DNA of 64,000 nucleotides from Octopus sinensis (taxonomy: Eukaryota), in the NCBI RefSeq assembly GCF_006345805.1, contig NC_042999.1, positions 52,638,001 through 52,702,000 on the forward strand, read 5' to 3'. The notes below the pieces were generated by a model that was given only the letters and a program-made list of their open reading frames with translations, searched no databases and was not told the origin of the DNA. This document shows, piece by piece, positions 7,664 to 49,110 of the stretch (its first letter is position 1; every line of letters starts with the position of its first letter). A program made the position numbers and the translations under genes.

Positions 7664-7713
<50 letters not shown>

Positions 7714-7822: not shown

Positions 7823-7875
<53 letters not shown>
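7589..7875. repeat. Compound (AAT)n/(GAT)n microsatellite
   Basis: Direct reading of the sequence. Confidence 0.95.
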
Positions 7876-7877
<2 letters not shown>

Positions 7878-12774: not shown

Positions 12775-12802
12775 TAAAACTACTACTACTACTACTACTA
12801 CA

Positions 12803-12835
<33 letters not shown>

Positions 12836-12931
12836 ACTACTACTACTACTACCACTTCCACCACCACCACTACCACCACCACGACCACGACCACCACTAC
12901 CACCACCACCTCCACGACCACGACCACTACC

Positions 12932-12963
<32 letters not shown>

Positions 12964-13105
12964 CACTTCCACCACCACCACCATCAGAACCACCACGACC
13001 ACCACGACCGCCACTACCACCACCACCACCACTACTACTACTACTACTCTACTACTACTACTACTACTCTACTACTACTACTAATAATAATAATAATAAT
13101 AATAA
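12775..13105. repeat. Compound trinucleotide repeat (CTA/CTG/CCA/CGA/AAT)
   Basis: Direct reading. It accounts for the low-complexity 188-aa and 108-aa ORFs. Confidence 0.9.
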
Positions 13106-17191: not shown

Positions 17192-18104
17192 AAATATTTA
17201 TATAGTTGGTAGTAATGCGCTTATTTTGTTTTTTAATTTAACGGCATTTTGATAGATGAATGTAACCTGCGAACAATATACATATGATATTCATTTAAAG
17301 ACAAAAATTCAGTGCTTTTCTTTCTTTTATATTCTTAATATAATTAATTCTTAATTACTTGAAAGTTCCTCCGCCTTTCTCAGAGAATTACTTAGTAGCG
17401 ACATTAGATTACTATATTTTCGTTCTCTAAGATGAAATTTTCTACTCATTCAAAAATTATATTTGCTTACGTCATTCAACGCATCGCTACTTGCCAAAAT
17501 GATCTAAATCTATGGCATTGGCATATTGTATTACTTTCCTTGGCTCACTAACTTTATAATTAGGCAAAGTAAAACATTCCAAATGAATTGGTATCCTATT
17601 TTCTATTTGTAAAAATGATTGTCTGCTGGTCTTGGCTGGCTTCAAAGGACTATTCCTAGCTGATGCTTTCTAAATATGCTCAACTATGGCTAGGATGTTT
17701 TTTTTTTTTTTCTTTATATGCCTCATCAGCGTTACCTAAGCTCTGCAAATGATGATCAGATATCACACACTATACCTGAATAAAGTTTGACGTGGGAATG
17801 TAAGAAAGTATGGGTGAAGGCATGCTGTCTAGGGCTTGGGGTATTACATTCACGCTCACACGATCGCTGGATCATGGGTTCAATTCCCGGATCGGGTGGA
17901 GCGCTGTGTTCTGGAGTAAAACACTTCATTTCACCTTCCTCCAATCTACTCAACTCCAAGTGGGTCACCCTCTGACGTAATAGCCTTCTGATAAGGGGGT
18001 GATGTTATCCTGCTCACCTGACCAGCGGGGTGGAGTCATTTGCATTATCACCAGCGTTGTATTGCAACATCCGATACTCCCGTCCATAGCGTCATAGGAA
18101 TTTA

Positions 18105-18610
18105 TGTATGTATGTATGTATGTATGTATGTATGTATGTATGTATGTATGTATGTATGCATTCATGTATGCATGTATGATGTATGTATGTATTTATGAAT
18201 GTATGTATGCATTTATGTATGTATGAATGTATGTATGTATTCATGTATGTATATTTTCAAGTATGTATGTATGAACCTATGTATGTATGCATGTATGTAT
18301 GAATGTATATATGTATGTATGTATGAACCTATGTATATATTCATGTATTTAAGTATTCATGTATGTACGAACATTTATGTATTCACGTATGTCTGAATGT
18401 ATGCCTGAATGTAAAAATGCATGCATACATGTATAAATGCATGTACGTATGTATATATATATATGTATGCATGTATGTATGTGTATGTATGTATGTATGT
18501 ATGTGTGTGTATGTATGTATGTATGTATGCATGTATGTATGTATGTATGCATGTATGCATGTATGCATGCATGTCTGTATGTATGTATGTATGTATGTAT
18601 GCATGTATGT
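18105..18610. repeat. Degenerate (TATG)n satellite tract
   Basis: Direct reading. Confidence 0.9.
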
Positions 18611-23152: not shown

Positions 23153-23653
23153 AAGCATGTTTGCACTCCTCACACAAAGATGTATGAGATGGCTTGAGCA
23201 TGTTAGCCGTATGAAAGATGGCAGAATCCCCAAGGACATACTCTGCGGAGAGCTTGCTAGGGGTACTAGGACTGTGGGTAGACCGTTCTTACGTTACAAG
23301 GATGTTTGCAAAAGGGACATGAAGGCCTGCAACATCAATATTAGTAGTTGGGAAGCAATTGCCAGCAACCGTGGAGATTGGCGACGTACCGTAAAAGAGG
23401 GAATACAAAGGAGTGACAGAGAGAGAGGAGAAATGGAAAGACAAGAAAAAACGTCAACAAGACACTATGACACTACAACCAGCCAGGAACAGTCTTCGCT
23501 ACACTTGCGGTACCTGCCAGAGGGAATGTTTGTCCAGGATAGGACTACACAGCCACAGCAGGAAATGTATCAGGACATGAAATATAAAAGCCGGATGGAC
23601 TATTTTATGCGCAACTCCATTGTCTCCCGAGACAAAAAGGATGCCAACAACAA
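23151..23653 (+). mobile_element. RTE-clade LINE 3' end, 5'-truncated
   Basis: RWLEHVSRMKDGRIPKDILCGEL..G.R.VGRP.LRYKDVCKRDMK...WE.IA..R..WR. In a shifted frame, CGTCQRECLSRIGLHSHSRKC (RTE C-terminal zinc motif). 3' UTR CCATTGTCTCCCGAGAC...GGATGCC(AAC)n. Confidence 0.9.
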
Positions 23654-23669
23654 TATGCATACAACATAC

Positions 23670-23724
<55 letters not shown>

Positions 23725-23726
23725 CA

Positions 23727-23772
<46 letters not shown>

Positions 23773-24297
23773 TTCCCTCACTAAACCTTATGACATTGCT
23801 TGAAATAAAACTTGATTTTATGACTATACCATTTAGTATGTCTGTTTACCCCAAACAGATACTACTCTGTTTTCTCTCAGCCTTAAATATACAAAGGATT
23901 TGATAAACTAGTCTATAAATTAAAACTGACCCCATAAAAACAAATAAGAGAAAAATCAGTGTCACGAAGTGTCTTTCAGTTACAACTATGATGTTGTTGG
24001 TACAACATGTTCTTTGTCTATCTCCGTAACTTCTTGGAGGTTTAAGGTAAAATTATACTAATGTGTCCTTCTATTCTAATTTAATTAAATTCTATGTCTT
24101 TGCGCTGCTGAAGATTGATCTACATTTTAAATTGATGATTGCATTGTTCAATTAAATGGAGTTGCATGAAACGATCGTACTGCAATACCTCTGGATATCC
24201 TTGTTGTTTATCTTGATTTTAATCACTTTATTTTGAAATTGTATGAATAATACCGTACTAAATTATAGTGCCTCAACTTAAGTACCAAATTCATCTG

Positions 24298-24600
<303 letters not shown>

Positions 24601-25792: not shown

Positions 25793-25933
25793 TGGGGAGG
25801 AGAGAATGAGAGAGAGAGCGGGGGAGAGAATGAGAGCAAAGAAAAATGATATATAGATATTAAAATATTGTTAACGCAATCTTTGATGTAATGAGGCTTA
25901 AATTTTGCAAATTAAATGCATTCTATTCTTCAG

Positions 25934-26299
25934 GAAAGATACTTTTTGACCTTGACCTGCACGTCACAGCGGAAATTTGGCTTCGGAGGGCCACTCAGAT
26001 GAGTCAGCGAAAAGATCTGGAAGCTGCAACACTCTTCCAGAAAATCCGAGTCCATCGATTATATCAACCCCTGGTGAAAGATTCTAAAGTGAAAGTAGAT
26101 TTTACACTATATGGACGTGCCGTAGTGGCGAGAGAAGATGTAAAGGCTGGTGATATAGTCCTTGCGGATCGACCTGCGGTATTTGCTCAGATATTAGAGA
26201 AGGATCCTGTGTTGGCCTGTCCAAATTGTGCCAAATCTCTAATGTCAGCACAAGATTACTTCGGCTCAAGTAATTTAAAGAAGAATAAAACTCTAAAAG
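25934..26299 (+). CDS. SMYD-family (SET and MYND) lysine methyltransferase, first detected coding exon: TPR motif, SET-N, first half of MYND
   Basis: Acceptor TTCTATTCTTCAG|GA, donor AAAG|GTAAGT, phase 1-1, 366 nt. Encodes GKILFDL..AEIWLRRA (TPR spacing), YGRAVVAREDVKAGDIVLADRP (SET-N) and CPNC. Upstream exon(s) not found. Confidence 0.9.
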
Positions 26300-26629
26300 G
26301 TAAGTCTCATCTACCACTGTATTAGTCCACACTAACCAAATTCTTGAACTGTCATTTCCGAAAAATGGAATTCATCTCTCGTACATTGGGATCACATTCA
26401 ATACTAACGTTTAACAATCGGCCAAAATTTGAAACTCGGAGAAATGATGTGCGAGTTTCTGCTTGCAATAAATTATTTGTTAAATATAATTACTTCTTCT
26501 ATTATGCAATCTCCTTTCTTCTTGTCTAGCATAAAGTGTATACACACACACACATGCGTATACATATATATGCATATGTATGTACGCACGTATTTATATG
26601 CATGTATATATATGTGTGCGTTGAGGGGT

Positions 26630-28200
26630 TACTATAAAAAATATTTTTTATATATTTATTAATCTTATAAGATTTTTAGAGTATATATAATAATTAGTGG
26701 TTTTTAATTATTTAGCTTATTCTGTATTAAGTATTATTTATGATAGTTATTTTATTAATAAATCTTATAGTATAGAGTGATTCTATTCTTTATTTGTGAC
26801 TTCATTCTATTTACATTTATTGATAAACCATAACTGTTCCCATTCACAATCTTCATTGATAAAGTGTATTTGTTCCTCACGCTTAATGAATTCTTCAACA
26901 CTTTATTCTTTTTTTGCTAATAACGTAATTCCACGTGTAATCTTATAAACGCTGTAAAGACATTTTCCGATTCAAAATTTTAGTTCATCACAAAACCTCG
27001 CTAAGCTAAGTATATATTTATATTTAAGATCTTTAAATTTTAATATTTATAAGTCTTATGGTATAATATTATTGTTTTTTTATGCTTATATCGTTGTTTA
27101 TCTAATTATCGTAATTTTTTATATAATTATTAGATATTAACTTCAAGTTTATTCGCAAGATTTTACTTAGCGATAGATATGTTGTTTGATAGCAAGTATA
27201 TGAGTTGGTTAAAGTTAGATTCATGTATATACATGTATTAATAGCATTAATTGTAGTTTTAAATCTCTTATAATTATTATTTTAACTTATATATTGTCTT
27301 TTCAAATTGTTATTTGCTAGTTACATTATTCCCATTGATAAATATATATATAGTATTTATTTGTTACTATATAACTACGAATTGATTATTTCTTTAAGTA
27401 CTTTAAAGATAAGATTGTTTGTTTGTATTTTTGAAATTAGCTATTTCATCTTTAAATATGAAAAATTAATTTAATAGGTCTTTATTATATGTGCATATAT
27501 ATTTATTTATAGAGATTATTTTAGATCTTAATTATAATATTTATATACATTTATATATTTTCATTGATAATTTATATATTATTTAAATTTTATATTTTAA
27601 TAATATGAATAATCATTTTTATTTGTAAAATATTTATGTAATTAGATATTGACTATTACTGATATTAGATCATTGGTGGGTTTCTTACCTTAAAAATTAA
27701 TACTTAAAAATTAAAATTAATATTTAACATTATAATCGTTGTTTTGACATAATCATAATCGTTAAGTTTCTATTTTTATAATAGAGTTTTTTATAAGAAA
27801 ATTTATTATATTATTTATTTCTTAAAAAATATTGTTTAGATATTTTTGATTATTTATTAAAATATTACAATTAACCTGAAGATTGACTGTAACCATAACT
27901 CGAATAATTAATTGAATTTAAATTATTGTTATTCGAATTGGTTACGTGCATGAAACGATCGTAGTGTTTTTACTCTATATTTTATATTAAACTTTTAATA
28001 CTCTTTGATAGTTTATAAAAAAAATAAAAAAATATAAACAAAAATTAAAAAAATAAATAATTAAATAAAATAATAATAGAAATATATATATATATTTAAA
28101 TATATATATATATTTATAATTTATAAGTTTAAATATTAATTTAAATAATTGGATTTTTATATTTTATATTTTATATTTTATATTTTTTATATATTTTTTA
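26630..28200. other. Extremely AT-rich block; possible garbled duplicate of nearby sequence (assembly artefact) or hypermutated copy
   Basis: Abrupt drop in G+C. Shares CTGAAGATTGA (27876 vs 24108) and TGCATGAAACGATCGTA (27947 vs 24163) in the same order with the 24.1-kb region. Confidence 0.45.
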
Positions 28201-28271
28201 ATTAATTTTATTTCTATGTACTGGCTTCTGATTTTCGATATTTGATTTGCCTAATAGTGGTTTTATCTCTA

Positions 28272-28310
<39 letters not shown>

Positions 28311-28320
28311 TATGTGTGTA

Positions 28321-28382
<62 letters not shown>

Positions 28383-28419
28383 TATACACACATATATATA
28401 TGTATATATATATATTATT

Positions 28420-28455
<36 letters not shown>

Positions 28456-28590
28456 ATATATATATTATATATATTATATATATATATATATATATTATTT
28501 ATATATATATATATATATATATTTATGTATGTGTATATATGTATGTGAACATATGTGTTTTTTTAATACTAGGAATCAGGTGATAGCTGC

Positions 28591-29480
28591 GATGAAATCA
28601 GGAGAATAGAGAGGGTGATCAGCCAATTCAAAGCCACAGTCACGCACAGCAGCCAATGAAACGACAGGCTTGTGTGCTGGAGCAATGTTCTGATGAAACA
28701 AGATTCCTTTCCTCAGTTTTCCTTGCTGTTTGGTCTTGATAGTCTTTCGTTGCTGCCTCAGCAATTAGGCATGGTTCCCTTCACTGATAGTGCAATCAAT
28801 TTGAAGATGGTCACAACAAACCTGAGGCCATCATCTTCTCTACAGATGAAATGACCTTGGTTTTCTCTAGAGCTAAGAGGAGGAGGTGTTTCCATTGCAT
28901 GGATTGTTTCTCTGCCTCTGGCTCAAAGTGATGAAACTAACGCTCATCTTGGGTTGGGAAATGTTCAAGGAAACCAGTTGGATTTGCCTCAGACAATGTC
29001 AGATTGTCCCGTGATGGGATCAGCCTGGTGCGCTTTTGAACAGAAAACTTCGTAATGCCAAGCTCATTGTGCAGAATCTTCTCAACTCCCCCCTCTCTCT
29101 CTCTCTAGATATGCTAATAGTTTTGGCTATTGGATTTTTAGTAATCCATCAAAATGCGGTGAATAAACTCAATGTTTTCCTCAGTGGTGGTAATTTCAGG
29201 ACGTCCAGACCTTGAGTTATCTTCAAGATTCTCCCCTCCTAAATTTAGTTGCCAACTTTTGCAGTGTTCATAAAGCTAGAATGTCATTCTCTAATTTAAG
29301 TACCATGTCAGCATGAATGCTGTTTGAGACTAAATCCTTTTACTGCAGTCACTTGATAGCACCACACTACCAAATTGTGTCCAATTTGAAGAGAAGTCCC
29401 TACTGGCTCTTTGAACAGTTAGATGTCAGTTTACCTGGGTAAAAGCAATTAATAAGAAGAGCTGAAATTAATGTATGCAA
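28591..29480 (-). mobile_element. mariner transposase remnant in SMYD intron
   Basis: Minus strand SGRP..TTEENI, ILHNELG, TQDE..HHFEPE.EKQSMQWKH and GILFHQNIAPAHK...DCGFELADHPLYSPD (mariner QDNAPAH/YSPDL). Multiple stops and frameshifts. Confidence 0.85.
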
Positions 29481-30112
29481 GATTTCACAACACTAGCATT
29501 ACTCTTTCATAGTCAGCCTATGGACATTTCAGATATGTACAGAGAGTAAAAGTGAAAAAGAGAGAGACATTTGTATATCATACTTAAAACACATATCGCA
29601 TTGAAAGCCTTATATAAGGCGATATTCGTCTCAAGTTAGCATTACTTACAGACATTTAATGTTAAAGAAACGGAAAAATATCGGCAGCAGACAGAAAAAT
29701 ATCGGCAGCAGCGGTGGTGACATTGGCATTGCTAAGATCTTATAAACATAGTTACTAAATGTCTACAAAAGGTGCTTTCTGGAGACGAATACCATGGTTT
29801 TCACGCTTTCAAGATTATATCTTCATTAAGTATGATATACATATAGCTATTTAGAACTAACACTTCTTCTCTCCCTAATAACGCATGCGCGCACACATAT
29901 ATAGATACGTATAAGTTTGCATGCATATATTCATACATGCACGCACGCGTGCAACCCCCTCCCCACCTGTTTATCATCTAGTTATATTTTAGTTATATTT
30001 TACATGTCTAATGACTGAAATGGGATTTTATCGAAATCATTTGCTATTCATTTATTTTTTTTTGTATATGCATCTAGATCTCTCCTTTTTTATATATATA
30101 TTTCATATTCAG

Positions 30113-30455
30113 CCGCTGTTACCAAATACTGGCCAATTGTACCACGAATTCCTTGCAGTGGATGCGACAAAGAAATATATTGTTCGGAAACATGTCGTGA
30201 AGAAGCCTGGTCGAATTATCACGAGGTTCTGTGTCCATCTGTCAATCCGGAAGCTAATAAGCTGTACGATATCTGTCAGAAAATCAAAGAATTAAGTGAA
30301 CAACGACGAAAAATATGGAGCGCCAGTTTTTGTCCAACTATCCTTGCTCGAATTTGGGCTGCCATCTGTTGTCATGCGAAGAGACTGGCTGCTGAAAATG
30401 GTTCCACCACACCAACACAGATGCAATGGGCTATTGCTAAAGCTCCATACAGACG
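30113..30455 (+). CDS. SMYD-family methyltransferase, internal exon: second half of MYND and SET-I
   Basis: Acceptor TTTCATATTCAG|CC, donor AGACG|GTACAG, phase 1-2, 343 nt. Reads AAVTKYWPIVPRIPCSGCDKEIYCSETCREEAWSNYHEVLCPS...PTILARIWAAIC...KAPYR. Absent from the ORF track (that frame has no suitable start). Confidence 0.92.
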
Positions 30456-30577
30456 GTACAGTCTATAATTTATAGTGTATTACACATGCGCGCGCACACA
30501 CACAAACACATAATATCTGCAAGTTCTTATTTCTACAGTTCTATATTTAAGAGATGAAGAATGATGTGCATTATATA

Positions 30578-30666
30578 CATTATTTACATTTGACGGATAT
30601 TTGTCCTCATCTTGCTTGTTGTTAATACAAGGCATTTTTCGATGCTATAATAATAATAATAATAAT

Positions 30667-30698
<32 letters not shown>

Positions 30699-30754
30699 TA
30701 ATAAAAATAATAATAATAATAATAATAAAATAATAATAATAATAATAATAATAA

Positions 30755-30848
<94 letters not shown>

Positions 30849-30995
30849 TAACATCGAAAAATACCTTAGGAATGAGAACTCAGGTTCCAAATTTCCCCCA
30901 AGACACCTGATGAAGGATGGAGGATATATCAGCCGAAAAGTTGTGTTAACAACAAACAAGATGAGGACAAATATCCGTCAAATGTAAATAATGTA
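30578..30995. mobile_element. Penelope-like pLTR remnant in inverted arrangement around an (AAT)n/(ATT)n tract
   Basis: 30578-30626 is the reverse complement (1 mismatch) of 30946-30994. CATCGAAAAAT occurs at 30852 and, inverted, at ~30634-30644. The forward copy holds a hammerhead-like core. Confidence 0.6.
30903..30946 (+). ncRNA. Minimal type I hammerhead ribozyme-like motif (probably degenerate)
   Basis: ACAC-CTGATGA-A-GGATG-loop-CAGCC-GAAA-AG-TT-GTGT. Stem I ACAC/GTGT and stem II GG.TG/CAGCC with one mismatch. Stem III is AG where the palindromic CG of Penelope minimal hammerheads is expected. Confidence 0.55.
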
Positions 30996-31444
30996 AATAA
31001 TGTTCTTATTTCTAATTTCGAAATATTGGGAATGCTATGTAATTAAAATGTTTTCTTTTAAAACTGAATATGAATACTTTCGGTAATAGTCTATATTCAG
31101 TTGTAGTCTAGAAATTATGGTCTCAGCTGTTTCACTTTATTAATATTTCTATCTGATTCACTTGCCATAACGTATATACACATACGAATATATTTAAAAC
31201 TGTTTGTCTGGCGTATTGAATATTAAAATAAGGATAAAAATAGGGCAATAAGTTAATGTAAAAGAATTTAGTGTATCGTAAATTCGAAAATGAATAAAAT
31301 CTTTAAAACACATTTAGAAGGCTTCTAAGTGGACTTTTAAAGATGTGCATTTAATAATAATAAATCATATTACTCTACCTCCGGTATTTGAGTACTATTT
31401 TTACCCGCCTTGCTTCATATTTGCACTTACTTTGGTACTTTGGT

Positions 31445-31486
<42 letters not shown>

Positions 31487-32214
31487 TGTCTGATGATGTC
31501 TTACCTGGCCGAAACATACAAGTTGCTCTGAATAATATCCTTGCTTAAGATTGATAAATTTGTACTCTACAAAAATAGAGGGTGACAAACCCCGTCGATG
31601 CATCCAGTCCTGTTCGTTTAAGCTGTCGGGAAGCTAGTTGCAGAAGATTTTGGCACGTGAATTTCTTCCCTCAATTTTTCATGGAAGGAAGGTTTTTATG
31701 ATATTTTGGGGGTGTCTTCTTCTATTATAATAATTCTGTTGACGGAAGGAGCTGGAATACGAAGAATGAAGTTATCTGTCGGAGTAAATTCAATAACCGT
31801 TTATTCACTGGTCCTTCGCACAAGGGGTTTGCTTTTAGTAAACATCTTCACAGCAGTGCGTAGTTACTATAAACGTGAGGTTCAATAACCTCTGGAGACA
31901 ATGCATGTGGCATCACAACGAGACAAAATTCCGGGGGAAATGTCTTTTCCTTAAATAATGGTTGCAGGCGAGATCTCGTTTTTGTCGCGCGTATGGCAAT
32001 GATTGCAGGCGAGATCTCGCTGTTTCAAAATGGAGCTGGATTCTTTGTGCATCACTACAGGGGCTACCCCTATGAACGCCTGTGCGAAAATAGAAAATAA
32101 CTGGAGCAGGCACGAGAAAAGAGCGAAGATGGTAATCGATCGCAAACAAGATATGGTATAAACACGTGACAAAATCAGATTAAAGTCAAATTATTTTTAT
32201 TATATCAGAAAAAT

Positions 32215-32890
32215 AGTAAAGTGGTTAGCACACCGTGATAAATGCTTAGCCGTATTTCGTATTATGCAGCGAGCTGACATAAGGCAGCGAGATGGCAGAA
32301 ACGTTAGCGCGCCGGGCGAAATACTTAGCGGTAATTTGTCTGCCGCTACGTTCAGAGTTCAAATTCCGCCGAGGTCGACTTTGCCTTTCATCCTTTCGGG
32401 CTCGATAAATTAATTACCAGTTATGCACTGGGGACGATATAATCGACTTAATCCGTTTGTCTATCCTTGTTCGTTCTCTCTGTGTTTAGCCCTTTGTGGG
32501 TAGTAAAGAAACACGTATTTCGCCCGTCTGAACATTCTGAGTTCAAATTCAGCTTTGCCTTTCATCCTTTCCTGGTCGATAAAATAACTGCCAGCTGAGT
32601 AGTGGGGTCGATGTTATTGAGTAACCACTTCTCCCAAATTGAAGCCCTTGTGCGTAGAGTAAAAAAAGGGATATATCTGAAAATAGTAAGGCGGTAAGCT
32701 GGCAGAATCGTTAGCACGTCGGAAGAAATGCTTAGCGGCATTTCATCGCTCTTTATGTTCTGAGTCCAAATTCCGACGAGGTCGACTTAGCCTCTCATAC
32801 TTTCGGTTTCGATGAAATAAGTATCAGTTACTTACTGGCGTCGATGTAAACGACCCAAGATCTCAGGCCTTGTTACCTATAGTTGAAAGG
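32215..32890 (+). mobile_element. Cluster of nested/tandem tRNA-derived SINEs (GAGCTGGCAGAA family)
   Basis: At least three GAGTTCAAATTC B-box bodies and heads at ~32215, ~32285 and ~32690. Confidence 0.8.
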
Positions 32891-33353
32891 ATTATAGCTG
32901 AACATAATAATAAAGTATTCGGGACGGTTTCACCAAGAACATCTCCTGCTGGTTGTGCACCAGCATGGTCGTAATCTAACGACAAACCTAAACAAATTAA
33001 GAATAAATCAAGGGAAATGAAAGTCATATTTAAAAGCTAATCAATAATTTTACATTGAACAATAAAAAGTTGAATACGACAAAATTATTCGATAATTTTG
33101 AATTCTGTAGAGTAACATAAAGTAACGAATATATGGTGGAGAGTTATACGTCAATGAACCTTGGTATATGACTGGTATCTAGAATGTTTAGTGCGGTACT
33201 TAACTTACGAATCCAAACATTTAATAATTTCACAGGCTCGCATTTATTCACACTTCATCAATATCAAGTCTCATATCGAGATACTGTAATTCCCAACTAT
33301 TTCCGAATATATTTATCGAATGTATTAACATTTTTTTTTTCTTTCTTTTGCAG

Positions 33354-34053
33354 TTTTATTGCATATGGAGCCCAGGGTGTTGCAGGCAAATTCACGGTGA
33401 TGCATCAAGTTATGAAAGATGTCTTCAATGGTCTTCCTGAAGGTTTGCGTTACGATGTAACACCGCGTGAGTTCGACGGACGTTATCTACAAATGGCATG
33501 TAACGTACAATCATTCTCTGATGGACGAAATCCATTGCATTGTTTCTTAAATTCAATCAGTAATTTCTCTCAATATGCCCAGATTGCGGACCTTGTCGAC
33601 GTTGACAATATTCCGGAAGCCAATTTTGCTGGCGTGTTTCCGGTACAGTCTTGCTTGAATCATAGTTGTGCGAATACTATCGAAGTAATGGACGGTGTGT
33701 CGAAAGGACGACCCGGAATTCACTTAAGAGCCCGTATAAATATCAAAGCTGGTGAAGAATTATTTAGCACTTATATCGATACATCAATCCCACGTCGAGA
33801 AAGAAGAGCTTGGCTGTTCAGAGGCTACAATTTCTGGTGTCAATGTCCACGATGTAAATTTGAAGGAGACGGGCCAGATGTGTGTGCTAACTGTGAAACA
33901 CAAGCTCCAGAGGGAAAGCAATTCCCAGCCTGTGGTAAATGCCGGAAAGTTTGGTATTGTTCTCCAAAGTGTCAAAAGATTGCCTGGAAAGCTGGACACA
34001 AGAAAATTTGCAGTATGAGTCATTCAAAACTTTGCAGTTATAATCTTTATTAG
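33354..34053 (+). CDS. SMYD-family methyltransferase, terminal coding exon: SET-C, post-SET, second MYND finger
   Basis: Acceptor T-rich tract-TTTTGCAG|T, phase 2 matching the previous donor. Motifs GVFPVQSCLNHSC, EELFSTY, YNFWCQCPRC, then CANC...CGKC...YCSPKC...HKKIC. Stop TAG ends at 34053. Confidence 0.95.
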
Positions 34054-34514
34054 CACGTATCGCTACACAGCATTAGTAGAAGGTTTTAGATTACCGCTGT
34101 TTGCTATTTATTAATGTTTTCATGTTTTGTTTAATTTTATGATTTGGTTGTTAATTTACATTTTCAGTCTGTTTATTCTTGATATTTCCTACAGAATTCA
34201 GTGTAGTTCTGCTTGAAGAGCTTCAATATGTTCAGCAACTATAGCGCTAGCAGATATACATACATACATACATACATATATACATACATACATACATAAT
34301 ACATACATACATACATACATACATGCTTACATACATACATAATACATACATATACATATACACACACACATATATATAAAAGATATACACATATATGTAT
34401 GTATGTATATATATATATATAATATATATATATATAGATATATATATATATATTATATATATATATATATATAATATATATATACACACACACACACACA
34501 CATACATACATATA

Positions 34515-34667
34515 TACGACGGGCTTCTTTCAGTTTCCGTCTACCAAATCCACTCACAAGGCTTTGGTCGGCCCAAGGATATAGTAGAAGACACTTGCCC
34601 AAGGTGCCACGCAATGGGACTGAACTCGGAACCATGTGGTTCGTAAGCAAGCTACTTACCACACACC

Positions 34668-34670
<3 letters not shown>
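34515..34670 (-). mobile_element. CORE-type SINE 5' half
   Basis: Reverse complement of the head/CORE (GGCACCTTGGGCAAGTGTCTTCTACTATA). Confidence 0.8.
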
Positions 34671-34750
<80 letters not shown>

Positions 34751-36622
34751 ATGTATACGCACACACTCACACACACAAGCAGATAAATAAACCTGCAAGC
34801 TTACTCTATGATTGGCTTTGAGCAGCGCTTTTAATTGAAGCAATCCTGTTTCAGTTTTCCATGTAAAAAAATGGAAATATGCGTAAATATTGCATTCATG
34901 CCAGCGTTCTTTTAACTAGAATAGTGAAACCGCATGAATGCATGCACCATCTTATATTGCAGGCTGTCAAAACAGGCGCTTGCACAATTTCCTTTCAGTT
35001 TGCTTTCCATTTTCTGACACAAATGTATATATGTATGTATGTATAAACATGTAAACCTCTCTATGTCTGTATATATGTACCTATGTATGTATCCGTATAG
35101 AGTTACCCCAATGAAGATACAAAAGTAGAAATAGCTTCTTACACGTAATCTCATGAAATATGAGGAAAAAAATAATGCATGCAGACGTTTCAAAGCGAAG
35201 TTTCGATGAGAGAATGAGAGGCAGTTCAGTTAAGGGATGGCTGGGCTTCTTGTCAAAACTGATCCAATAATATTTCAACAAGATTCTATTTACGAAGGTT
35301 GTTTGAAAACAAATTTCATCATGTGAAACAGCAAACAATGTTGATATATCTTCTCTTAGCTTAAGACTCATTCTTCGTGTTTAGTAATTACAGCCAATCT
35401 GTGTCAAAGCGGTGCTTGAATGCGTGTAGCATATCGCCTCATATACATTGGTGGATATAAAATCTTTATTTGTAGGTCAACAAGGCTACCATTGGTTTCA
35501 CGCCCGAGTTTTCAGCAGTTATCAAGCCTGTCTCGTAGGATGTTGGTGTTTCTTTATTACCCACTAGGGGCCTCGTAGGATGTTGGTATTCGTCTCCATC
35601 CTGCATGAGAGTATATATAAATATATATGCATGTGTGTGTGTATGTATGTGTGTATGCACATGCATATGCAAGTGAGTTCATGTGTGCATGTCTATGTAT
35701 TTATGTATCTGCGTAACTATATGTTTTTATACAAGCATGTTAATTTGAACTAGCGAGACCCGTGAATATTTCACGGAATTAACTGTAAACTTGTTGGATT
35801 TTTTCTGAAAACTTTATCCAGAAAAACTGAAAGTGTAACCTGTGTTGTGTCTGTATCGAAAGATAGTCGCTCATCTGCTGAAGAAAATCTTTTTCTTTCG
35901 CTCTTCGCTTTTCCTTTCAACTAATCACGTGAAAACGTTATGGACGGGGTAAGTAATGCATGAACAAGAAGAATTATAAAATGTCTGCAATTAGTTGGTA
36001 TCTTCTCTTGCGTTTAGCGTGCAGGTAGGGAAATAAATTGGAAATAATCTTATAAATGAAGATATTGTCACATCTAAAATCTTTATCAAATAGTTGTTAA
36101 ACATTAAGCTTTCAGGTAAATCCTTCAATTCAACAGTTTGTTAAGTTTCCAATTTAATCTTTAATTAAACGCCAGTTAACTAACCCATGCAATTAAATGC
36201 CTGTGAAAGCTACCCTTAAATGCCTATTAAATTTGAAATTATATGTCAGTTAAACATCTTTTAAAATTATAATTAATACTCAGTTAAATGTTGTATTTAA
36301 AAAGGTCTAATTAAACGCCTGTTAAACCCTAAATTAAACTCCTATAACATCTCGAATTAAACTCCAATTAAATACAATCTCCTTTAATACCAGATATCCT
36401 ATAAAACTTCAGGCATAGAAATATATTCGGTGAGTTATTTAACGCGAGGAGTGGAGATTTCACGTCTCTGATATTTGTCCTTCCTGAAAAAAAATACCAC
36501 GCTCACATGAAGGGAGATGAAAACAGAAATGAGAGAGAGAGAGAGAAGGGGAGAAGGATTTAACTCGATGGGGAGAAGGAGAGACTGTGAGTAGTACTCG
36601 CTGTAATATATTTTTATCAAAT

Positions 36623-36818
36623 AATTTTTATGGATTGAATTCTAGTGTCTCAGAGCCAAAGTTTGGATTCTGGATCTTAAATTTTTTAAAATGAAACCCC
36701 TGGTATTATAACTATTAACACAATTTATGGATTGAATTCTAGTGTCTCAGAACCCAAGTTTGGATTCTGGGTCTTAAATTCTTTAAAATGAAACCCCTGG
36801 TATTATAACTATTAACAC
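36623..36818. repeat. ~99-bp tandem duplication (2 copies)
   Basis: TATGGATTGAATTCTAGTGTCTCAG...AAACCCCTGGTATTATAACTATTAACAC repeated with few substitutions. Confidence 0.9.
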
Positions 36819-38567
36819 AATTTCTGCATTTTCCTTATTGTTATATTCTGACGTTATTCTGTTATAATTCTCTTTAACCCTATTAAATCTAATAGGAACA
36901 GTATATTGTTTCTCAGGCAGCTCTGGTTTAGACCCTAGATATATTTATTAACAATCATTAAACTACCATTAACAAATACATCGAACATATAATGCATAAT
37001 ATATTAAGCAAGGTTATGGGTTGAATCCTGAAGCCGAATTCAACTGATGCAATTAAACTTGTTCTGCTGTGACTGACTAAAATGTTGATTGCGTGCTCTA
37101 TTTTATGCAAGTCAATGTGTTGTAGCACTAAAAACATTATTTAACGTATATCTATTCCGTGTTTTTTATTACAAGTGCTAAGAACTGCGCTGCACCACTT
37201 TATATGTAAATGGATTAAGGTTTGTCAATTATTAAAAAACCCTTTACTCTTTGTCGGTGGAAAACAATATATTTCGAGATACAACGATAATAAAACAATT
37301 TGTAAGAAAAAGAAAATCCCTATTACATCTAAAGAAAATTAAAAATATATATACACATATATATATTCAAATTTACTATTAAAAAAAAAATAGACAATAA
37401 AAAAAACAAAAGAAAAGAAAGAAGCGCAAAATATACCCAACAGAAACTTGAAAAGTTTGACTCGTCAAAACATTTCAGTCTAGAGATAGGTAATTCTCTG
37501 GCGATCATCAACAAAACTGACATTTCATATGTACATTCTCTTAAATTTCCTTACTTTAACTACAGATAAAATTTATTGCCAAGCATAAAACAAACCAAAC
37601 ATTACTGCCATTGCAGCTTTTAACTCTATAATTCTGTTCATTTTATTGAAGTTTTACACACTGACAGCTTCAAAGTAGTTTTATTACTATTGTAAATTTG
37701 GTTTTATTGTTTATTGATGTCTTTTTCTTTTTCAATTTATTGGTAACTAATATATTTTTTTTCATTCCAGTTCTACAAATGTTTCGTCGTTTATTGTTTT
37801 CCAAATGCTTAATGGATTTTTTTGATATTCTTTGATGCGCTAGACGCGATGGAGCAACAGCCTGTTTTTGGCCAAAATTATTCTGCAGCTCCGGTTTGAT
37901 TCCAGCATGCATTGTTTAAGTGTGTGTATTGAATATGCTTTAGAATACATCAGATTTAGAAAATCCTAACACTCCATTCCAAAGAAAAATTTCATTTATC
38001 TACCAGAAATATCCTTCTATAAATTTTCATGACTTCTATATTGTTACATGTCGATCAGTTAAAAACGTAAAATGGAATCTTCTTTAAATATTTTCTATAT
38101 AAATGGTCGACATGCCTAAATACATAATAAGAATTAATGAGGAAACTTCCATTTGGTCATTCGATCAGCTCCAAATAGGGGACACGTTTTTTTATTCAAA
38201 TCATAAATCACCATCTTTAAAAATGAATATTATATTGAATGGTTTTGCGCGAAATAAAGTACCTAAAAGAGTCAGAAGGGACATGGCAGGACGGATACTT
38301 ATTGACTGGAACAATCACGAACTGAGTTTTAGCTGCAGGACGGATATGAAGGATTTCAGAATTTAGATTAAACGAATCTAAATATACATTCTGAAGGGCT
38401 TTAATACCTGTCTTAATAATCAGTAATAAAAGGTTGAGGAGGGGATATACAAAGACGAAATCACCTGAAAGTCTAAGATTACTCGTTATTAAAACTTAAC
38501 AGGTTCTCATTCCGTGACATCAAAGCACAGTCAGTAGACATAACATCGAACCACCCTAGAGACACGG

Positions 38568-38626
<59 letters not shown>

Positions 38627-38699
38627 ATATGCATAATAGGTGAGTGTGCTTGTATATAGATGAATGAATTGATAAGCAGATAGGTATATATGTGAAATA

Positions 38700-39680
38700 T
38701 AGTCTAAAGCGTAACAATGTGGTTAGAAGCTTGCTTTCCAGCCACATGGTTCCGGGTTCAGTCTCAATGCGTGGAACCTCAGGCAAATGTCTTCTACTAT
38801 AGCCACGGATCGACCAAAACCTCGTGAGTGGATTTGCTGAAAGAAGCCCGTCGTGTGAGTGGATGAGTGGATGACATCGACCCCAGTGATTCACTGGTAC
38901 TTAATTTATCAACACCGAAAGGATTAAAGGCAAAGTCGACCTCGGCGGAATTTGAACTCAGAACGTGGCGACGGGTGAAATAACGCTAAGCATATCGTCC
39001 AGTGCGCTAACAATTCGGCCAGCACACCGCCTTTAACAACAAGAACAACAACAGCAGCAACAACCCTGAAATTTTGGTGGAGGGTATAAGTCGATTACAT
39101 TGACCCCAGTATTCAACTGGTACTATTTTACCGACCTCGAAAATATGAGAGGCAAAGTCGACCCCGGCGGCATTTGATCTCAGAAGGTGAAGACAGCCGA
39201 AATACCGGTCAGCATTTCGTCCGGTATGCTATCAATTCTGCCGGCACACCGCCTTCAACAACAACAACAACAATAATAATCCTTTCTACCATAGGAACAA
39301 GACCTGAAGTTTTGTGGGAGGGGACAAGATAATTACATCGACTCCAGTGTTTCTTAATTTATCGACCCATAAAGGACGAAAAGCAAATTCGATCTCAGTA
39401 GAATTTTATCCGAAGATGTGAAGAGGGACGAAATGGTAGCTAAGAATTCTACCAACTTGTTGCCTTATAGTTATAGATGATATATCAGAAAATGGATAAA
39501 GCGCCTAGTTAGCAGAATTATTAGCACGCCGGAAAAAAATACTCGGCAGCATTTCTTCTGGCTCTACGTTCTTAATGCCTCTCGGGTAGATTTTGTCTTC
39601 CATCCTCACTTGGGGCGATGAAAACAAGTACCAGCTGTGTATTGGGGTAAATGATCTTATTCTCTTCTCCAAAGTTGCTG
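38700..39680. mobile_element. Cluster of SINE fragments (one CORE-type +, three GAGCTGGCAGAA-family -, one degenerate +)
   Basis: Recognisable heads and bodies of both families, separated by (AAC)n/(AAT)n tails. Confidence 0.7.
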
Positions 39681-40674
39681 GCCCTTTTTCGATCGTCTGT
39701 CTTCAATGGGACGAAGTGGAAATATTTTATGAATATTTGTGAATAATTGTTGAAGTGAATCTAACGATTTTTTGTGTGTTTTTAAATGGCTTATAAACAC
39801 CTTCCACGCTGCAATTGTTTTTATTTCAGCACACGATCTCAGATCAGGTCACTTGCTATGCAAGTAGATCTCCGTAATATTTTAAATGAGTTCTAAATGA
39901 AATAATTCCATTTGTATTGTTGTAAGAGATTTTAAAATTACTTCTGAAATAAGCCATTATTTGGCTTTTATTAAGTGCCACGTTCCACCTATAAAGAGTT
40001 GTGCAACGTAACATTGTATGTTTGCGTGACAAATAACAACATACAAAAAGCTGTAACACATACTGTTAGAGTTGTTGAGGGCTGCGTGTTAATTTCCATG
40101 TAGTTTCGTGTACGTTAATCTACCGAGTAACTATAGAATCGTTTCACAAATATTTAGCAAATATCTGAATTTAGAAACACGAAATTATAAGCGGACAAAT
40201 TGAATTATAGTATATTTAATTATTACTATATGTGATTTCAAATTGCTTTGACTATTTCCCCACAAAGAAGAGAAAAAGATACATCTCGTAATTTAGACTT
40301 TTGCTATTAAATTTCAGTTGAAATATACTGCCGAATATATTTTTAAAATGATTAATAATTTAAACTGGCCTTTACAACAAAAGGGAACATAAAATGTTGA
40401 TAAAATGTTTAGGTTTTAATCACTTTAAGACAGCAGATTTGTATTCCTGTACAGGATCAATCCCTGCTTTAACAAAAGTGTTAATCGTTTGTCTCCCTCA
40501 TTAAATAAATATTTTCCAGCAGCTAGCTGATAAATCTAAGAAAACCGGATTAGAGATATTGATGAGATTTGGAACAGAGACTGATTCCGAAGAATTGCTA
40601 CAGATTTAAAGCAAGATTTAAATAACTTTCTGTTTTCACTGAGTTCAAATTATCGTTTATTTTTTTGTTTTTTT

Positions 40675-41100
40675 TTTACTTGTTTTAGTGATTAGACTGC
40701 GGCCATGCTGGGGCACCACCTTCAAGAAATTTAGTCGAATGAATCGATCCCAGTCTTTATTTTCGAATGACTGGTACTTATTCTATCGGCCTCTTTTGTC
40801 GAACCACCAGGTTACAGGGACATAAACAGGCCAGCACCGGTTATCAAGCGGTGGTGTTGGTGGACAAACATAGACACAAACACGCGCGCGTCGGCACACA
40901 CGCACACACACACACACGCACACACACACACACACGCACACATGACAGGCTTTTTCTTCCCACTATCCTTCTACCAAATCCACTCACAAAGCTTTGGTCG
41001 GTCTGAGGCTGTAGTAGAAAAGACTAGTCCAAGGCGTCACGCAGTGTGACTGAACCCGGAACCATCTGGTTGGATAAGCAAACTTCTTACCACACGACCA
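40675..41100 (-). mobile_element. CORE-type SINE, near full length
   Basis: Reverse complement of 1771-2170, from the ACTGCGGCCATGCTGGGGCACC end to the GAACCCGGAACC head. Confidence 0.75.
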
Positions 41101-41948
41101 ATAGAAAACGTGTGGCGGAGGAGGAGTTGTAGAACTGGGTGCTGGTTATTTGTTACGATTGCCGAGTCAGTGGTACAGGTTCTAGTTAGGAATAGTACTT
41201 TGTACTCCACCTAGTCCTCGTACTTCATAAATCGAAAATGGACAAGGGTTAGGGGCAATCGTTGTAGCTAAGAAACTGATTTTTTTCAAAATCATTTAAA
41301 TTAGAAACAACAAAATTTTCACGGAAGTCATTCAACCTTTAAACTTATTCGACATACACCACTGCGTTCGGTAGTGTTTAATAAGCCTTTCTGTTTTATT
41401 CATCTATTATATCGTTTCATTATTTTATTTTGCTACGGTTGGAGTGTCTCTGCATGTTCATTTTCTATAAAGCACACTAACCAGCCCATCAGATTGCCTT
41501 TCTTTTGACTTGAATGCATAAACGCCGATCTCGCATGCTTAACATGTCTCAAAGCTGAGGCAGCAGTTTTGTTTGTTTTACAGTTAAAGGGAAATAACTC
41601 TTAATCTTCAGAACTTTTCTGTTTCTTTCCCGTCAAGTTTTCGTGCGAAGGAGGCCGTTGATGTCAAATTCATTAATTAGACAGGCGGACAAAATGATGC
41701 CTTGCGGTGTTTAATTACATCCTTCTCCGATGACACCCACTTTACCTTTCCTTCTTCTCTTTTTTTATAACATAATATCTGTTCACTTATTGTAGTTGAT
41801 TGTAGTCTATCCTGTTTTACACATCTTTCCTTTCAGAATTCGTAGCATATACTTTCATTGTAAACATACGATTGTTGCCTGATCAATTTGTATTCACCGT
41901 AATTTTAATTATCATTTAATATTATCATTATTAATTTTCACATTATTC

Positions 41949-41982
<34 letters not shown>

Positions 41983-42119
41983 GTGATAATGAAATATAAC
42001 TTCACATAACTTCTTAACAAATGCATTTTTCTAATTACTTAAATCCACATTTTGAGCACCGACTTTCATATTTAGTCTGCACACGTTATTGAATCCCAAA
42101 TGATAATTTATGCATAAAC

Positions 42120-42153
<34 letters not shown>

Positions 42154-42298
42154 CCTGTTTATATACCACTACCCTCATTTAACCTTTCTATTCCTTCCTT
42201 TTTTCCCCCCACTACTTTTTCTCCCACTTAACCATTCCTTGTCGTAATCCTTCACTTTTCCATGTCTTAATAACTAACACCTTCTTTTTTAATTCCAG

Positions 42299-42413
42299 CC
42301 GCAGTCAGTGCTGTTGCGCCGTCACCAGCGTCCATCTGATGTTGACTTCGATCTTCCATCTCATTCTGATAATTCACAAATCCCTCCATTACTCACCAAA
42401 ATCAATGAGGATG
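42299..42413 (+). CDS. Candidate orphan exon, product unknown
   Basis: Branch-point-like AACTAAC, pyrimidine tract and CCAG acceptor; donor GATG|GTAAC. Open in two frames (PQSVLLRRHQRPSDVDFDLPSHSDNSQIPPLLTKINED or RSQCCCAVTSVHLMLTSIFHLILIIHK...). No partner exon identified. Confidence 0.3.
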
Positions 42414-48470: not shown

Positions 48471-48724
48471 AATATATATGTGTGTGTGTGTACATAATTA
48501 AGGATAAAATCATTATAAAAATAACGATCCTATCAGGATCCTAATAAAACATCATATAAGTAAGAAATTATATAGATATTTAATTATATAGGTATAATTA
48601 TATAGGTATAATTAAAGGTGCTGAGTGTTTGATGTGCTATTGAGGGTCGTATGGCATCTATTTCTAGCGTGTTGGTGCTATTTCCCAGTACCTTTAATAA
48701 TAATTATATCTATATAATCACATA

Positions 48725-49110
<386 letters not shown>

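What the first reader, a model, noticed from the sequence alone, without database searches (positions are those of the whole stretch)
25934..34053. Atypical SMYD methyltransferase: TPR - SET/MYND - post-SET - second MYND finger
Seen: three phase-compatible exons give ~469 aa. They contain a TPR-spaced helix pair, SET-N, MYND-1 (CPNC-x37-CSGC-x5-CSETC-x8-HEVLC), catalytic NHSC and EELFSTY, post-SET CQCPRC, and a complete second MYND (CANC-x12-CGKC-x5-CSPKC-x8-HKKIC) at the C-terminus. Known: SMYD1-3 end in a TPR-like CTD, SMYD4 has N-terminal TPRs, and SMYD5 has a long insert in its MYND and an acidic tail. These canonical members carry one MYND. MYND fingers bind PxLxP-type motifs of co-repressors, and TPRs often bind HSP90. 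Inference: an invertebrate SMYD subfamily combining a SMYD5-like core, an N-terminal TPR and an extra protein-binding MYND, with the catalytic residues retained. It is probably not a 1:1 SMYD5 orthologue.
Basis: partly seen in the sequence, partly recalled or inferred. Interest (0 to 1): 0.7.

Follow-up and report, generated by a model that had tools for sequence, protein, structure and literature searches.

The report
Octopus TPR-SMYD methyltransferase gene, known class
The window holds the last three coding exons of an Octopus sinensis gene for a predicted protein lysine methyltransferase with N-terminal TPR repeats, a SMYD5-like SET/MYND core and a second MYND finger; this domain layout is real, but it was described in 2015 as the "atypical TPR-SMYD group".

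Summary
The three exons (25934-26299, 30113-30455, 33354-34053) have AG/GT borders. Joined, they give exactly residues 253-721 of RefSeq XP_036356879.1 (Octopus sinensis LOC115209940 isoform X1).

Two corrections:
- The gene is incomplete in the window. Residues 1-252, which carry all the Pfam-detectable TPRs, lie more than 25.9 kb upstream, off the window.
- Isoform X2 splices at 34012|GT to a small terminal exon at 42299-42339. MYND-2 is complete in both isoforms.

It is an invertebrate SMYD subfamily with a SMYD5-like core, catalytic residues retained, and it is not the SMYD5 orthologue: Octopus has a separate 393-aa SMYD5 that is 25% identical.

The novelty is gone. Calpena et al. 2015 (PMC4521844) described this class, N-terminal TPRs plus a long-spacer MYND plus an extra C-terminal MYND, in Lottia, Crassostrea, Aplysia and amphioxus. 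Lottia 232186 is among the hits here.

One modest new point: the class also occurs in a brachiopod, an annelid, bdelloid rotifers, a priapulid and a nematomorph. That favours an ancestral bilaterian gene with many losses over horizontal transfer. Function and substrate remain untested.

The parts
25934..26299 (+). Internal coding exon, aa 253-374 of the 721-aa protein. It encodes the last TPR-like helix pair, a linker helix, SET-N (YGRAVVA...) and the first CxxC of MYND-1 (C95/C98 codons at 26218-26229). The first two bases complete a Gly codon begun in an upstream exon that lies outside the window.
   Evidence: AF2 helices 246-258, 262-275 and 281-299, and strands from 305.
30113..30455 (+). 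Internal coding exon, aa 375-489. It encodes the end of the 37-residue MYND-1 spacer, the remaining MYND-1 zinc ligands (CSGC...CSETC...HEVLC, 30154-30234) and the start of the long helical SET-I insert.
33354..34053 (+). Last coding exon of isoform X1, aa 490-721. Contents:
- the rest of SET-I and SET-C with NHSC (33658-33669) and the catalytic Tyr (33772-33774);
- post-SET CQCPRC (33838-33855);
- MYND-2 (33883-34011);
- the tail SMSHSKLCSYNLY and stop TAG (34051-34053).
   Evidence: SET-C, post-SET and MYND-2 lie in one uninterrupted exon.
34013..42298 (+). Alternative intron of isoform X2 (8286 nt). The donor is GCA|gtatgagt, one base after the last MYND-2 Cys codon. The acceptor is ttaattccag|CC.
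   Evidence: The spliced product equals P0001 (XP_029634436.1) aa 253-721.
42299..42339 (+). Terminal coding exon of isoform X2, encoding (T)AVSAVAPSPASI and stop TGA (42337-42339).
   Evidence: The same kind of tail is annotated in O. vulgaris, O. bimaculoides and Argonauta hians.

Best explanation
The window carries the 3' part of Octopus sinensis LOC115209940. This gene is one of two octopus paralogues of the 'atypical TPR-SMYD' class of SET-and-MYND proteins.

The 721-aa protein has these parts:
- two N-terminal TPR arrays (about aa 3-128 and 176-299);
- a split SET domain whose insert is a MYND finger with a SMYD5-type long spacer;
- a long helical SET-I region;
- SET-C with the NHSC and Tyr catalytic motifs;
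- a Cys-rich post-SET;
- a second, canonical MYND finger at the point where SMYD1-4 have a helical C-terminal domain and SMYD5 has an acidic tail.

Most likely mechanism (inferred, not shown): it is an S-adenosylmethionine-dependent protein lysine methyltransferase. The catalytic core would work like that of other SMYDs. The TPR arrays and MYND-2 would act as protein-protein interaction modules that recruit partners or substrates. MYND-2 keeps the conserved Gln and Trp of the 'CQK-x-AW' helix that, in other MYND fingers, contact proline-rich peptides (from memory, not tested here).

Shown: the gene structure, the domain architecture, conservation of all catalytic and zinc-binding residues, class membership, and distinctness from SMYD5.
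Inferred: enzymatic activity, and the roles of the TPRs and MYND-2.
Unknown: the substrate.
For: Identity and gene model:
- 100% match to RefSeq isoforms X1 and X2.
- Cuttlefish-type mRNA contigs from 9 runs carry the orthologue as one uninterrupted 2172-nt ORF. It aligns without gaps across all the octopus junctions and has the X1-type tail.

Architecture:
- Pfam finds TPR, SET and two zf-MYND stretches.
- The AF2 model has pLDDT 89.1 and pTM 0.75.
- Foldseek's top hits are SMYD2, SMYD3 and SMYD1, followed by TPR proteins.

Catalytic and zinc-binding residues are invariant in 18 and 48 sequences spanning several phyla. The NHSC, EELFSTY and CxCxxC motifs align to the SMYD2 motifs NHSC, EEVFTSY and CECQEC.

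Class membership:
- Lottia 232186, the type sequence of Calpena 2015, is hit P0039: 45% identical, 737 bits to the family profile.
- Full-length family members score at least 330 bits; the next best proteins score at most 143 bits.
- The neighbour-joining tree gives the TPR-SMYD clade 92/100 and canonical SMYD5 100/100.
- Literature description: PMC4521844.
Against: - There is no biochemical evidence for any member of the class, so a pseudoenzyme or scaffold role cannot be excluded.
- There is no direct RNA-seq junction evidence from Octopus sinensis itself. An exact-product look-up found no transcript contig.
- The tree is neighbour-joining on 363 columns, without labelled SMYD3 or SMYD4 sequences. 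The position of the class relative to those classes is therefore not resolved here.
- The window lacks the first 252 codons, so the N-terminal architecture rests on the RefSeq model and its homologues.
Confidence: 0.9

Rival explanations
1. It is the octopus SMYD5 orthologue, which has gained TPRs and a MYND in this lineage. NCBI names several family members 'SMYD5-like'.
For: - The core is closest to SMYD5: hhalign probability 99.9 across columns 51-414, including the long MYND spacer and the ...EGDxPDV stretch after post-SET.
- Automatic names such as 'SMYD5-like' appear among the hits.
Against: - A separate canonical 393-aa SMYD5 exists in Octopus vulgaris (P0362; the O. sinensis copy was not looked at). 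Separate copies also exist in Haliotis, Sinanodonta and Branchiostoma, all of which also have TPR-SMYD genes.
- The window protein is only 25% identical to P0362.
- The two groups form separate clades, 92 and 100.
- There is no acidic tail.
Confidence: 0.03
2. The TPR-SET/MYND-MYND layout is a gene-model artefact that fuses neighbouring genes, or reads through into an unrelated MYND exon.
For: - The RefSeq models are predictions.
- The upstream exons are more than 25.9 kb away and outside the window.
- Older O. bimaculoides models were fragmentary: 455, 483, 284 and 257 aa.
Against: - SET-C, post-SET and MYND-2 lie in one uninterrupted exon.
- Cephalopod mRNA contigs from 9 independent runs encode TPR, SET/MYND and MYND-2 in a single 723-codon ORF.
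- The same architecture recurs in molluscs, Lingula, Owenia, Priapulus and amphioxus.
Confidence: 0.03
3. The protein is a catalytically inactive scaffold that uses its TPRs and two MYND fingers only for binding.
For: - No activity has been shown for any member.
- It has three kinds of protein-binding module.
- The substrate is unknown.
Against: - NHxC, the catalytic Tyr, the Gly of the N-SET motif and all post-SET cysteines are invariant across phyla. That pattern is expected for a conserved enzyme rather than a decayed one.
- The equivalent residues H316, C317 and Y351 are required for human SMYD5 activity (PMC13362160).
Confidence: 0.15
4. The class spread by horizontal transfer between molluscs and cephalochordates. 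Calpena et al. raised this as the alternative to an ancient bilaterian gene with many losses.
For: In 2015 the class was known only from molluscs and amphioxus, with mollusc and amphioxus sequences as each other's best hits.
Against: - Members are now found on large scaffolds of Lingula (Brachiopoda), Owenia (Annelida, 34.9 Mb), bdelloid rotifers, Priapulus (281 kb) and Gordionus (Nematomorpha, 93.7 Mb).
- The non-mollusc members among them that were scanned (Owenia, Rotaria, Priapulus, Gordionus) keep the C-terminal MYND.
- Calpena et al. already noted that exon structures differ between molluscs and amphioxus.
Confidence: 0.07

Closest known systems
Atypical TPR-SMYD group (Calpena, Palau, Espinos & Galindo 2015, PLoS One 10:e0134106; type sequences Lottia gigantea 232186 and a Branchiostoma floridae protein)
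   Same: - One or two N-terminal TPR blocks.
- A divergent SET/MYND core with the SMYD5-type long spacer between zinc-ligand pairs 1 and 2.
- An additional C-terminal MYND finger.
- More than one copy per genome.

Lottia 232186 (P0039) is 45% identical over the core and belongs to the same clade.
   Different: Nothing in kind.

- The octopus gene has more coding exons than the 'three exons in mollusks' reported for Lottia: at least 4, or 5 in isoform X2.
- It has two annotated C-terminal tails.
- The window gene belongs to the mollusc paralogue group that does not contain Lottia 232186. That group has weak support (53/100), whereas the Lottia-containing group has 93/100.
SMYD5 (canonical, about 390-420 aa)
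   Same: - Long-spacer MYND, the 'M-insertion'.
- Long SET-I insert.
- NHSC and Tyr catalytic motifs.
- CxCxxC post-SET followed by ...D-x-PDV.
- No helical C-terminal domain.
- Profile-profile probability 99.9.
   Different: - SMYD5 has no TPRs and no second MYND, and ends in an acidic Glu/Asp tract.
- Identity is only 25%.
- Octopus has its own separate SMYD5.
SMYD4
   Same: [quoted passage not shown]
   Different: - SMYD4 has a short-spacer MYND and a C-terminal TPR-like domain (Calpena 2015; the spacer point is implied by their contrast with the Smyd5 class).
- The octopus model has only MYND-2 after post-SET.
- No direct comparison with labelled SMYD4 sequences was made here.
SMYD1/2/3 (solved structures)
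   Same: - Best structural matches to the model (Foldseek E about 1e-8, TM normalised to target 0.42-0.48).
- SET-C and post-SET motifs align residue for residue.
   Different: - SMYD1-3 have a short-spacer MYND, a short SET-I and a helical C-terminal lid.
- They have no N-terminal TPRs and a single MYND.

Membership tests
SMYD family (SET domain split by a MYND finger) | SET domain interrupted by an insert, with SET-N and SET-C recognised as one domain | tested here: met
   Pfam SET model positions 1-104 of 105 span residues 60-376 of the window product (313-629 of the full protein), E=2.6e-8.
SMYD family (SET domain split by a MYND finger) | MYND-type C4-C2HC zinc finger inside the split | tested here: met
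   C95, C98, C136, C139, C145, C149, H158 and C162 are invariant in 18 and 48 sequences. Pfam zf-MYND reports a second stretch.
SMYD family (SET domain split by a MYND finger) | Catalytic NHxC and Tyr motifs, and a Cys-rich post-SET | tested here: met
   N338, H339, C341, Y376, C398, C400 and C403 are invariant. They align to the SMYD2 motifs NHSC, EEVFTSY and CECQEC.
SMYD family (SET domain split by a MYND finger) | SMYD fold | tested here: met
   AF2 model pLDDT 89.1. Foldseek top 12 are all SMYD2, SMYD3 or SMYD1, probability 1.0, E 1e-8 to 4e-8.
SMYD family (SET domain split by a MYND finger) | SAM-dependent lysine methyltransferase activity | not testable with these tools
   Needs recombinant protein and an assay.
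Atypical TPR-SMYD group (Calpena 2015) | One or two TPR domains N-terminal to the core | tested here: met
   Pfam TPR_1, TPR_2, TPR_16 and TPR_19 hits at aa 5-105 and 190-250 of P0001. AF2 shows helical arrays at 3-128 and 176-299. This region is encoded outside the window.
Atypical TPR-SMYD group (Calpena 2015) | Additional MYND finger at the C terminus | tested here: met
   Pfam zf-MYND positions 1-39 of 39 at aa 666-708, E=1e-15. All eight ligands are invariant.
Atypical TPR-SMYD group (Calpena 2015) | Internal MYND with the SMYD5-like long spacer between ligand pairs 1 and 2 | tested here: met
   37 residues lie between C98 and C136. The spacer aligns to the SMYD5 spacer in hhalign.
Atypical TPR-SMYD group (Calpena 2015) | Groups with Lottia 232186 and the amphioxus sequences, away from Smyd3, Smyd4 and Smyd5 | tested here: met
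   P0039 (LOTGIDRAFT_232186) and Branchiostoma P0046/P0048 fall in the same clade, NJ bootstrap 92/100, separate from canonical SMYD5 (100/100). Score gap: at least 330 bits against at most 143 bits. Labelled Smyd3 and Smyd4 sequences were not in the tree.
SMYD5 class | One-to-one orthology with SMYD5, a single copy per metazoan genome | tested here: not met
   A separate canonical SMYD5 exists in Octopus (P0362, 551 bits to the SMYD5 profile). The window protein is 25% identical to it.
SMYD5 class | No TPRs, and a C-terminal acidic (Glu/Asp/Ser-rich) tract | tested here: not met
   TPRs are present. The C terminus is MYND-2 plus a 13-residue non-acidic tail.
SMYD4 class | N-terminal TPR plus a C-terminal TPR-like domain after post-SET | tested here: not met
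   The N-terminal TPR is present. After post-SET the model shows only MYND-2 (residues 666-708) and no helical C-terminal domain.
SMYD4 class | Sequence clustering with SMYD4 proteins | not tested
Calpena 2015 places the group outside Smyd4.

The most novel reading that the evidence does not exclude
TPR-SMYD is a distinct, ancient SMYD class that was already present in the last common bilaterian ancestor. It has been kept in molluscs, brachiopods, at least one annelid, bdelloid rotifers, priapulids, nematomorphs and cephalochordates. It was not seen here in vertebrates, tunicates, arthropods or nematodes. In this class a second MYND finger occupies the position of the C-terminal lid of SMYD1-4, so substrate access and partner recruitment would be governed differently from every studied SMYD. 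If so, it methylates a substrate, or uses a targeting logic, that no model organism can reveal.
Probability: 0.6. Interest if true: 0.4.

Novelty: already known. Interest (0 to 1): 0.2.

Why it matters
As a discovery it matters little. The gene is annotated in RefSeq as 'uncharacterized protein LOC115209940', and its class and domain layout were published in 2015.

What interest remains:
- No member of the class has been studied biochemically.
- The class is missing from all the standard model animals.
- Calpena et al. left its origin open, between horizontal transfer and ancient origin with losses. The wider distribution found here (brachiopod, annelid, rotifers, priapulid, nematomorph, all on large scaffolds) favours ancient origin. 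A proper phylogeny could now settle the question.
- The distribution also suggests that the unplaced 'smyd-like' gene reported in Owenia (PMC12153100) belongs to this class. This is inference.

Tried and rejected
- **Upstream exons in the window.** I looked with tblastn (word size 2, E up to 1000) and with exact 6-mer matching in six frames. Nothing was found, so the 5' third of the coding sequence is off the window.
- **Transcript contigs for the exact octopus product.** None are on record. I used cuttlefish-type orthologue mRNAs instead.
- **First tree attempt.** Biopython distances plus mafft localpair timed out. I redid it with numpy Kimura distances.
- **Taxa of four divergent family members.** P0096, P0098, P0102 and P0103 come only from metatranscriptome or run assemblies. 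The two looked up (P0098, P0103) trace only to a JGI sample id (3300018902) and a run id (ERR6349783), with no organism named. They are left unplaced.
- **HSP90/HSP70 'two-carboxylate clamp' in TPR block 1.** I threaded the sequence by eye onto the usual KxxGN / N-R / KxxxR pattern. The positions are L4, I8, R42, A72 and L76, so the clamp looks absent. This is manual inference and I give it little weight.
- **Other genes or RNAs in the window.** There are no Rfam hits at gathering score. Long ORFs outside the gene are microsatellite read-throughs or LINE remnants.
- **Rejected readings.** SMYD5 orthologue, gene-fusion artefact and SMYD4 member; see the rivals and membership tests.

Full report
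**1. What is in the sequence**

- 25934-26299: ttcttcag|G ... AAG|gtaagt
- 30113-30455: catattcag|C ... ACG|gtacag
- 33354-34053: tcttttgcag|T ... stop TAG at 34051-34053

Joined, they read through in one frame. They give 468 full codons plus the last two bases of a Gly codon.
- MYND-1: CPNC-x37-CSGC-x5-CSETC-x8-HEVLC
- NHSC and EELFSTY
- post-SET CQCPRC
- MYND-2: CANC-x12-CGKC-x5-CSPKC-x8-HKKIC

Pfam finds SET (E=2.6e-8, spanning the split) and zf-MYND (E=1e-15, two stretches, MYND-2 covering the whole 39-position model). phmmer against PDB sequences aligns the SET-C/post-SET segment to SMYD2, SMYD3 and SMYD1. In that alignment NHSC, EELFSTY and CQCPRC lie on the SMYD2 motifs NHSC, EEVFTSY and CECQEC.

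**2.

A search of 5.8 billion proteins gives a 100% match to Octopus sinensis LOC115209940, 721 aa. Cluster members show two RefSeq isoforms.

- Isoform X1 (XP_036356879.1) ends ...HKKICSMSHSKLCSYNLY.
- Isoform X2 (XP_029634436.1) leaves exon 3 at 34012 (GCA|gtatgagt), one base after the last MYND-2 cysteine codon. It joins a terminal coding exon at 42299-42339 that encodes (T)AVSAVAPSPASI and a stop.

MYND-2 is complete in both isoforms. An 'xxHS' motif right after MYND-2 (SMSHS, SLSHS, QLQHS, QTPHS...) recurs across the family. The X1 tail is therefore the ancestral type.

Residues 1-252 are not encoded anywhere in the window on either strand. The intron before 25934 is longer than 25.9 kb and the gene runs off the 5' end of the window.

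All the Pfam-detectable TPRs lie in that missing part, at aa 5-105 and 190-250. In an AlphaFold2 model built on 48 homologues (pLDDT 89.1, pTM 0.75) it forms helices 246-258 and 262-275. These continue the second helical-repeat array (176-299) into the SET domain.

The model shows, in order:
- TPR block 1 (helices 3-128);
- a lower-confidence linker;
- TPR block 2;
- the SET/MYND core with a long helical SET-I;
- post-SET;
- MYND-2 (666-708), with no helical C-terminal domain.

**3. Support for the junctions**

No octopus transcript contig with the exact product is on record. The decapodiform orthologue, P0003, shares a 90% cluster with an Acanthosepion pharaonis protein. It is encoded as one uninterrupted 2172-nt ORF on contigs of about 2.5-5.7 kb from nine sequencing runs (the four examined were 3.2-5.7 kb), which looks like assembled mRNA. 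It aligns to the octopus protein at 67% identity. The only gap is at residues 3-4, and there are none at the three junctions. It carries all the domains and the X1-type tail.

SET-C, post-SET and MYND-2 lie in a single exon, so the second MYND cannot be a fusion artefact.

**4. Conservation**

In an 18-sequence core alignment covering molluscs, Lingula, amphioxus and unplaced sequences (A1), and in a 48-sequence full-length alignment (A2), the following are invariant:
- all eight MYND-1 ligands;
- N338, H339 and C341;
- the catalytic Y376;
- the three post-SET cysteines;
- all eight MYND-2 ligands;
- the Q and W of the 'CQK-x-AW' helix.

Foldseek against the PDB puts SMYD2, SMYD3 and SMYD1 first (E about 1e-8, probability 1.0). 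TPR proteins follow, including Sti1/Hop TPR2AB.

**5. Relation to SMYD5**

I built a profile of canonical SMYD5 proteins (A3) from sequences with the typical ...PDVTSEEE acidic tails. It retrieves named SMYD5 from vertebrates, cnidarians and insects. It also retrieves SMYD5 from Octopus vulgaris (P0362, 393 aa), Haliotis, Sinanodonta and Branchiostoma. All of these taxa also have the TPR/double-MYND protein.

The window protein is 25% identical to octopus SMYD5. Profile-profile comparison gives probability 99.9 over columns 51-414. The match covers the long MYND spacer and ends at ...EGDxPDV. At that point SMYD5 turns acidic and this family starts MYND-2.

An exhaustive HMM search of 1.84 billion representatives shows a clear gap. 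Full-length family members score 330-737 bits. The next proteins score at most 143 bits; they include canonical SMYD5 at about 100-113 bits and assorted protist and fungal SET-MYND proteins.

A neighbour-joining tree on 363 core columns with 100 bootstraps gives the TPR/double-MYND clade 92 and canonical SMYD5 100. Within molluscs there are two paralogue groups. The group containing Lottia 232186 and the second octopus gene, LOC115221259, has support 93. The group containing the window gene has support 53.

**6. Comparison with what is known**

[quoted passage not shown] )'.

LOTGIDRAFT_232186 is hit P0039 here, and the Aplysia protein is P0037. The octopus gene meets every defining feature of that group; see the membership table.

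Full-text searches found no later paper that characterises the class. A 2025 annelid study left one Owenia SMYD unplaced as 'smyd-like'. I infer, without checking the accession, that it is the Owenia member found here (P0094).

Calpena et al. could not decide between horizontal transfer (mollusc to amphioxus or the reverse) and an ancestral bilaterian gene with many losses. The named hits now include:
- cephalopods, gastropods, bivalves and a chiton;
- Lingula (Brachiopoda);
- Owenia fusiformis (Annelida, 34.9-Mb scaffold);
- bdelloid rotifers (Rotaria, Adineta);
- Priapulus caudatus;
- Gordionus (Nematomorpha, 93.7-Mb scaffold);
- three Branchiostoma taxa.

The non-mollusc members that were scanned keep the C-terminal MYND. 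Owenia and Priapulus also keep detectable TPRs. No vertebrate, tunicate, arthropod, nematode, echinoderm or cnidarian member appeared among the named hits. That absence comes from ranked lists and is not proof of loss.

This distribution favours an ancient bilaterian origin with repeated loss.

**8. Mechanism**

Shown: the architecture, and the conservation of the catalytic and zinc sites.

Inferred from established SMYD and SET biochemistry: it is a SAM-dependent protein lysine methyltransferase. NHSC and the conserved Tyr would line the cofactor and lysine channel, and the post-SET zinc cluster would close it. The equivalent H316, C317 and Y351 are needed for human SMYD5 activity (PMC13362160). 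The TPR arrays and MYND-2 are most simply read as partner- or substrate-recruiting modules.

Whether the TPRs bind HSP90 is untested. By manual threading, the clamp residues of EEVD-binding TPRs are not present in block 1 (low weight). The substrate is unknown.

**9. Verdict**

- Observation: confirmed.
- Interpretation: supported.
- Novelty: already known. The gene is a RefSeq-annotated member of a class published in 2015.
- Interest: low (0.2). What remains of interest is that the class is functionally unstudied, and that its origin can now be settled.

Noticed in passing
Outside the window: aa 132-160 of P0001/P0062 (linker between the two TPR blocks): The motif YNAVxLCSQDxYPGDDELxxxExEIL is the most conserved part of the N-terminal half. 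Y144, P145, D147 and E154 are at least 90% conserved in 48 sequences. It sits in the lowest-confidence stretch of the model, pLDDT 61-83. It could be a docking or regulatory segment.
   Followed up: no
window 25891-25933 (+): The open frame of exon 25934-26299 extends 14 codons upstream of the acceptor to an ATG (MRLKFCKLNAFYSS). An old O. bimaculoides model (P0064, 483 aa) starts there. Current RefSeq models and all homologues instead splice in from upstream TPR exons, so this stretch is probably intronic.
   Followed up: partly
Other octopus chromosome (P0045, LOC115221259): Octopus sinensis has a second TPR-SMYD paralogue, 725 aa and 43-44% identical over the core. Cephalopods, gastropods and bivalves each have members in two paralogue groups. 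Some species have three copies, for example Gigantopelta.
   Followed up: partly
L001 (JGI 3300018902), L002 (ERR6349783); proteins P0096, P0098, P0102, P0103: Four divergent full-length family members (378-477 bits) with a C-terminal MYND come only from metatranscriptome or run assemblies of unknown organisms. They group together weakly (58/100) at the base of the family. Their taxa could move the inferred age of the class.
   Followed up: partly
window 5871-6560 (+), 23157-23903 (+), 56046-56384 (-): These ORFs look like remnants of non-LTR retrotransposons. The first has a weak zf-RVT hit (E=0.0012). The others have no Pfam hit, but their sequences look to me like retroelement (LINE/RT) fragments. 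All lie in introns or flanks.
   Followed up: partly
window-wide, e.g. 7589-7876 (ATA)n, 12779-13083 (ACT)n, 18103-18610 (TATG)n, 24299-24589 (ATCT)n, 28272-28544 (AT)n, 48723-49082 (TATC)n: Microsatellite density is very high: 54 TRF rows at score 80 or above. Most of the long 'ORFs' in the window come from these repeats.
   Followed up: no
window 38866-39273 and 36627-36830 (inside the isoform-X2 intron): A 222-bp unit repeated 1.8 times (80% match) and a 97-bp unit repeated 2.1 times (94% match). They may be interspersed-repeat copies in tandem.
   Followed up: no
Literature: PMC12153100 (Genome Biol 2025): One Owenia fusiformis and one Dimorphilus SMYD were left unclassified as 'smyd-like'. 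The Owenia TPR-SMYD member found here (P0094, CAH1780281.1) may be that gene. I did not compare accessions.
   Followed up: no
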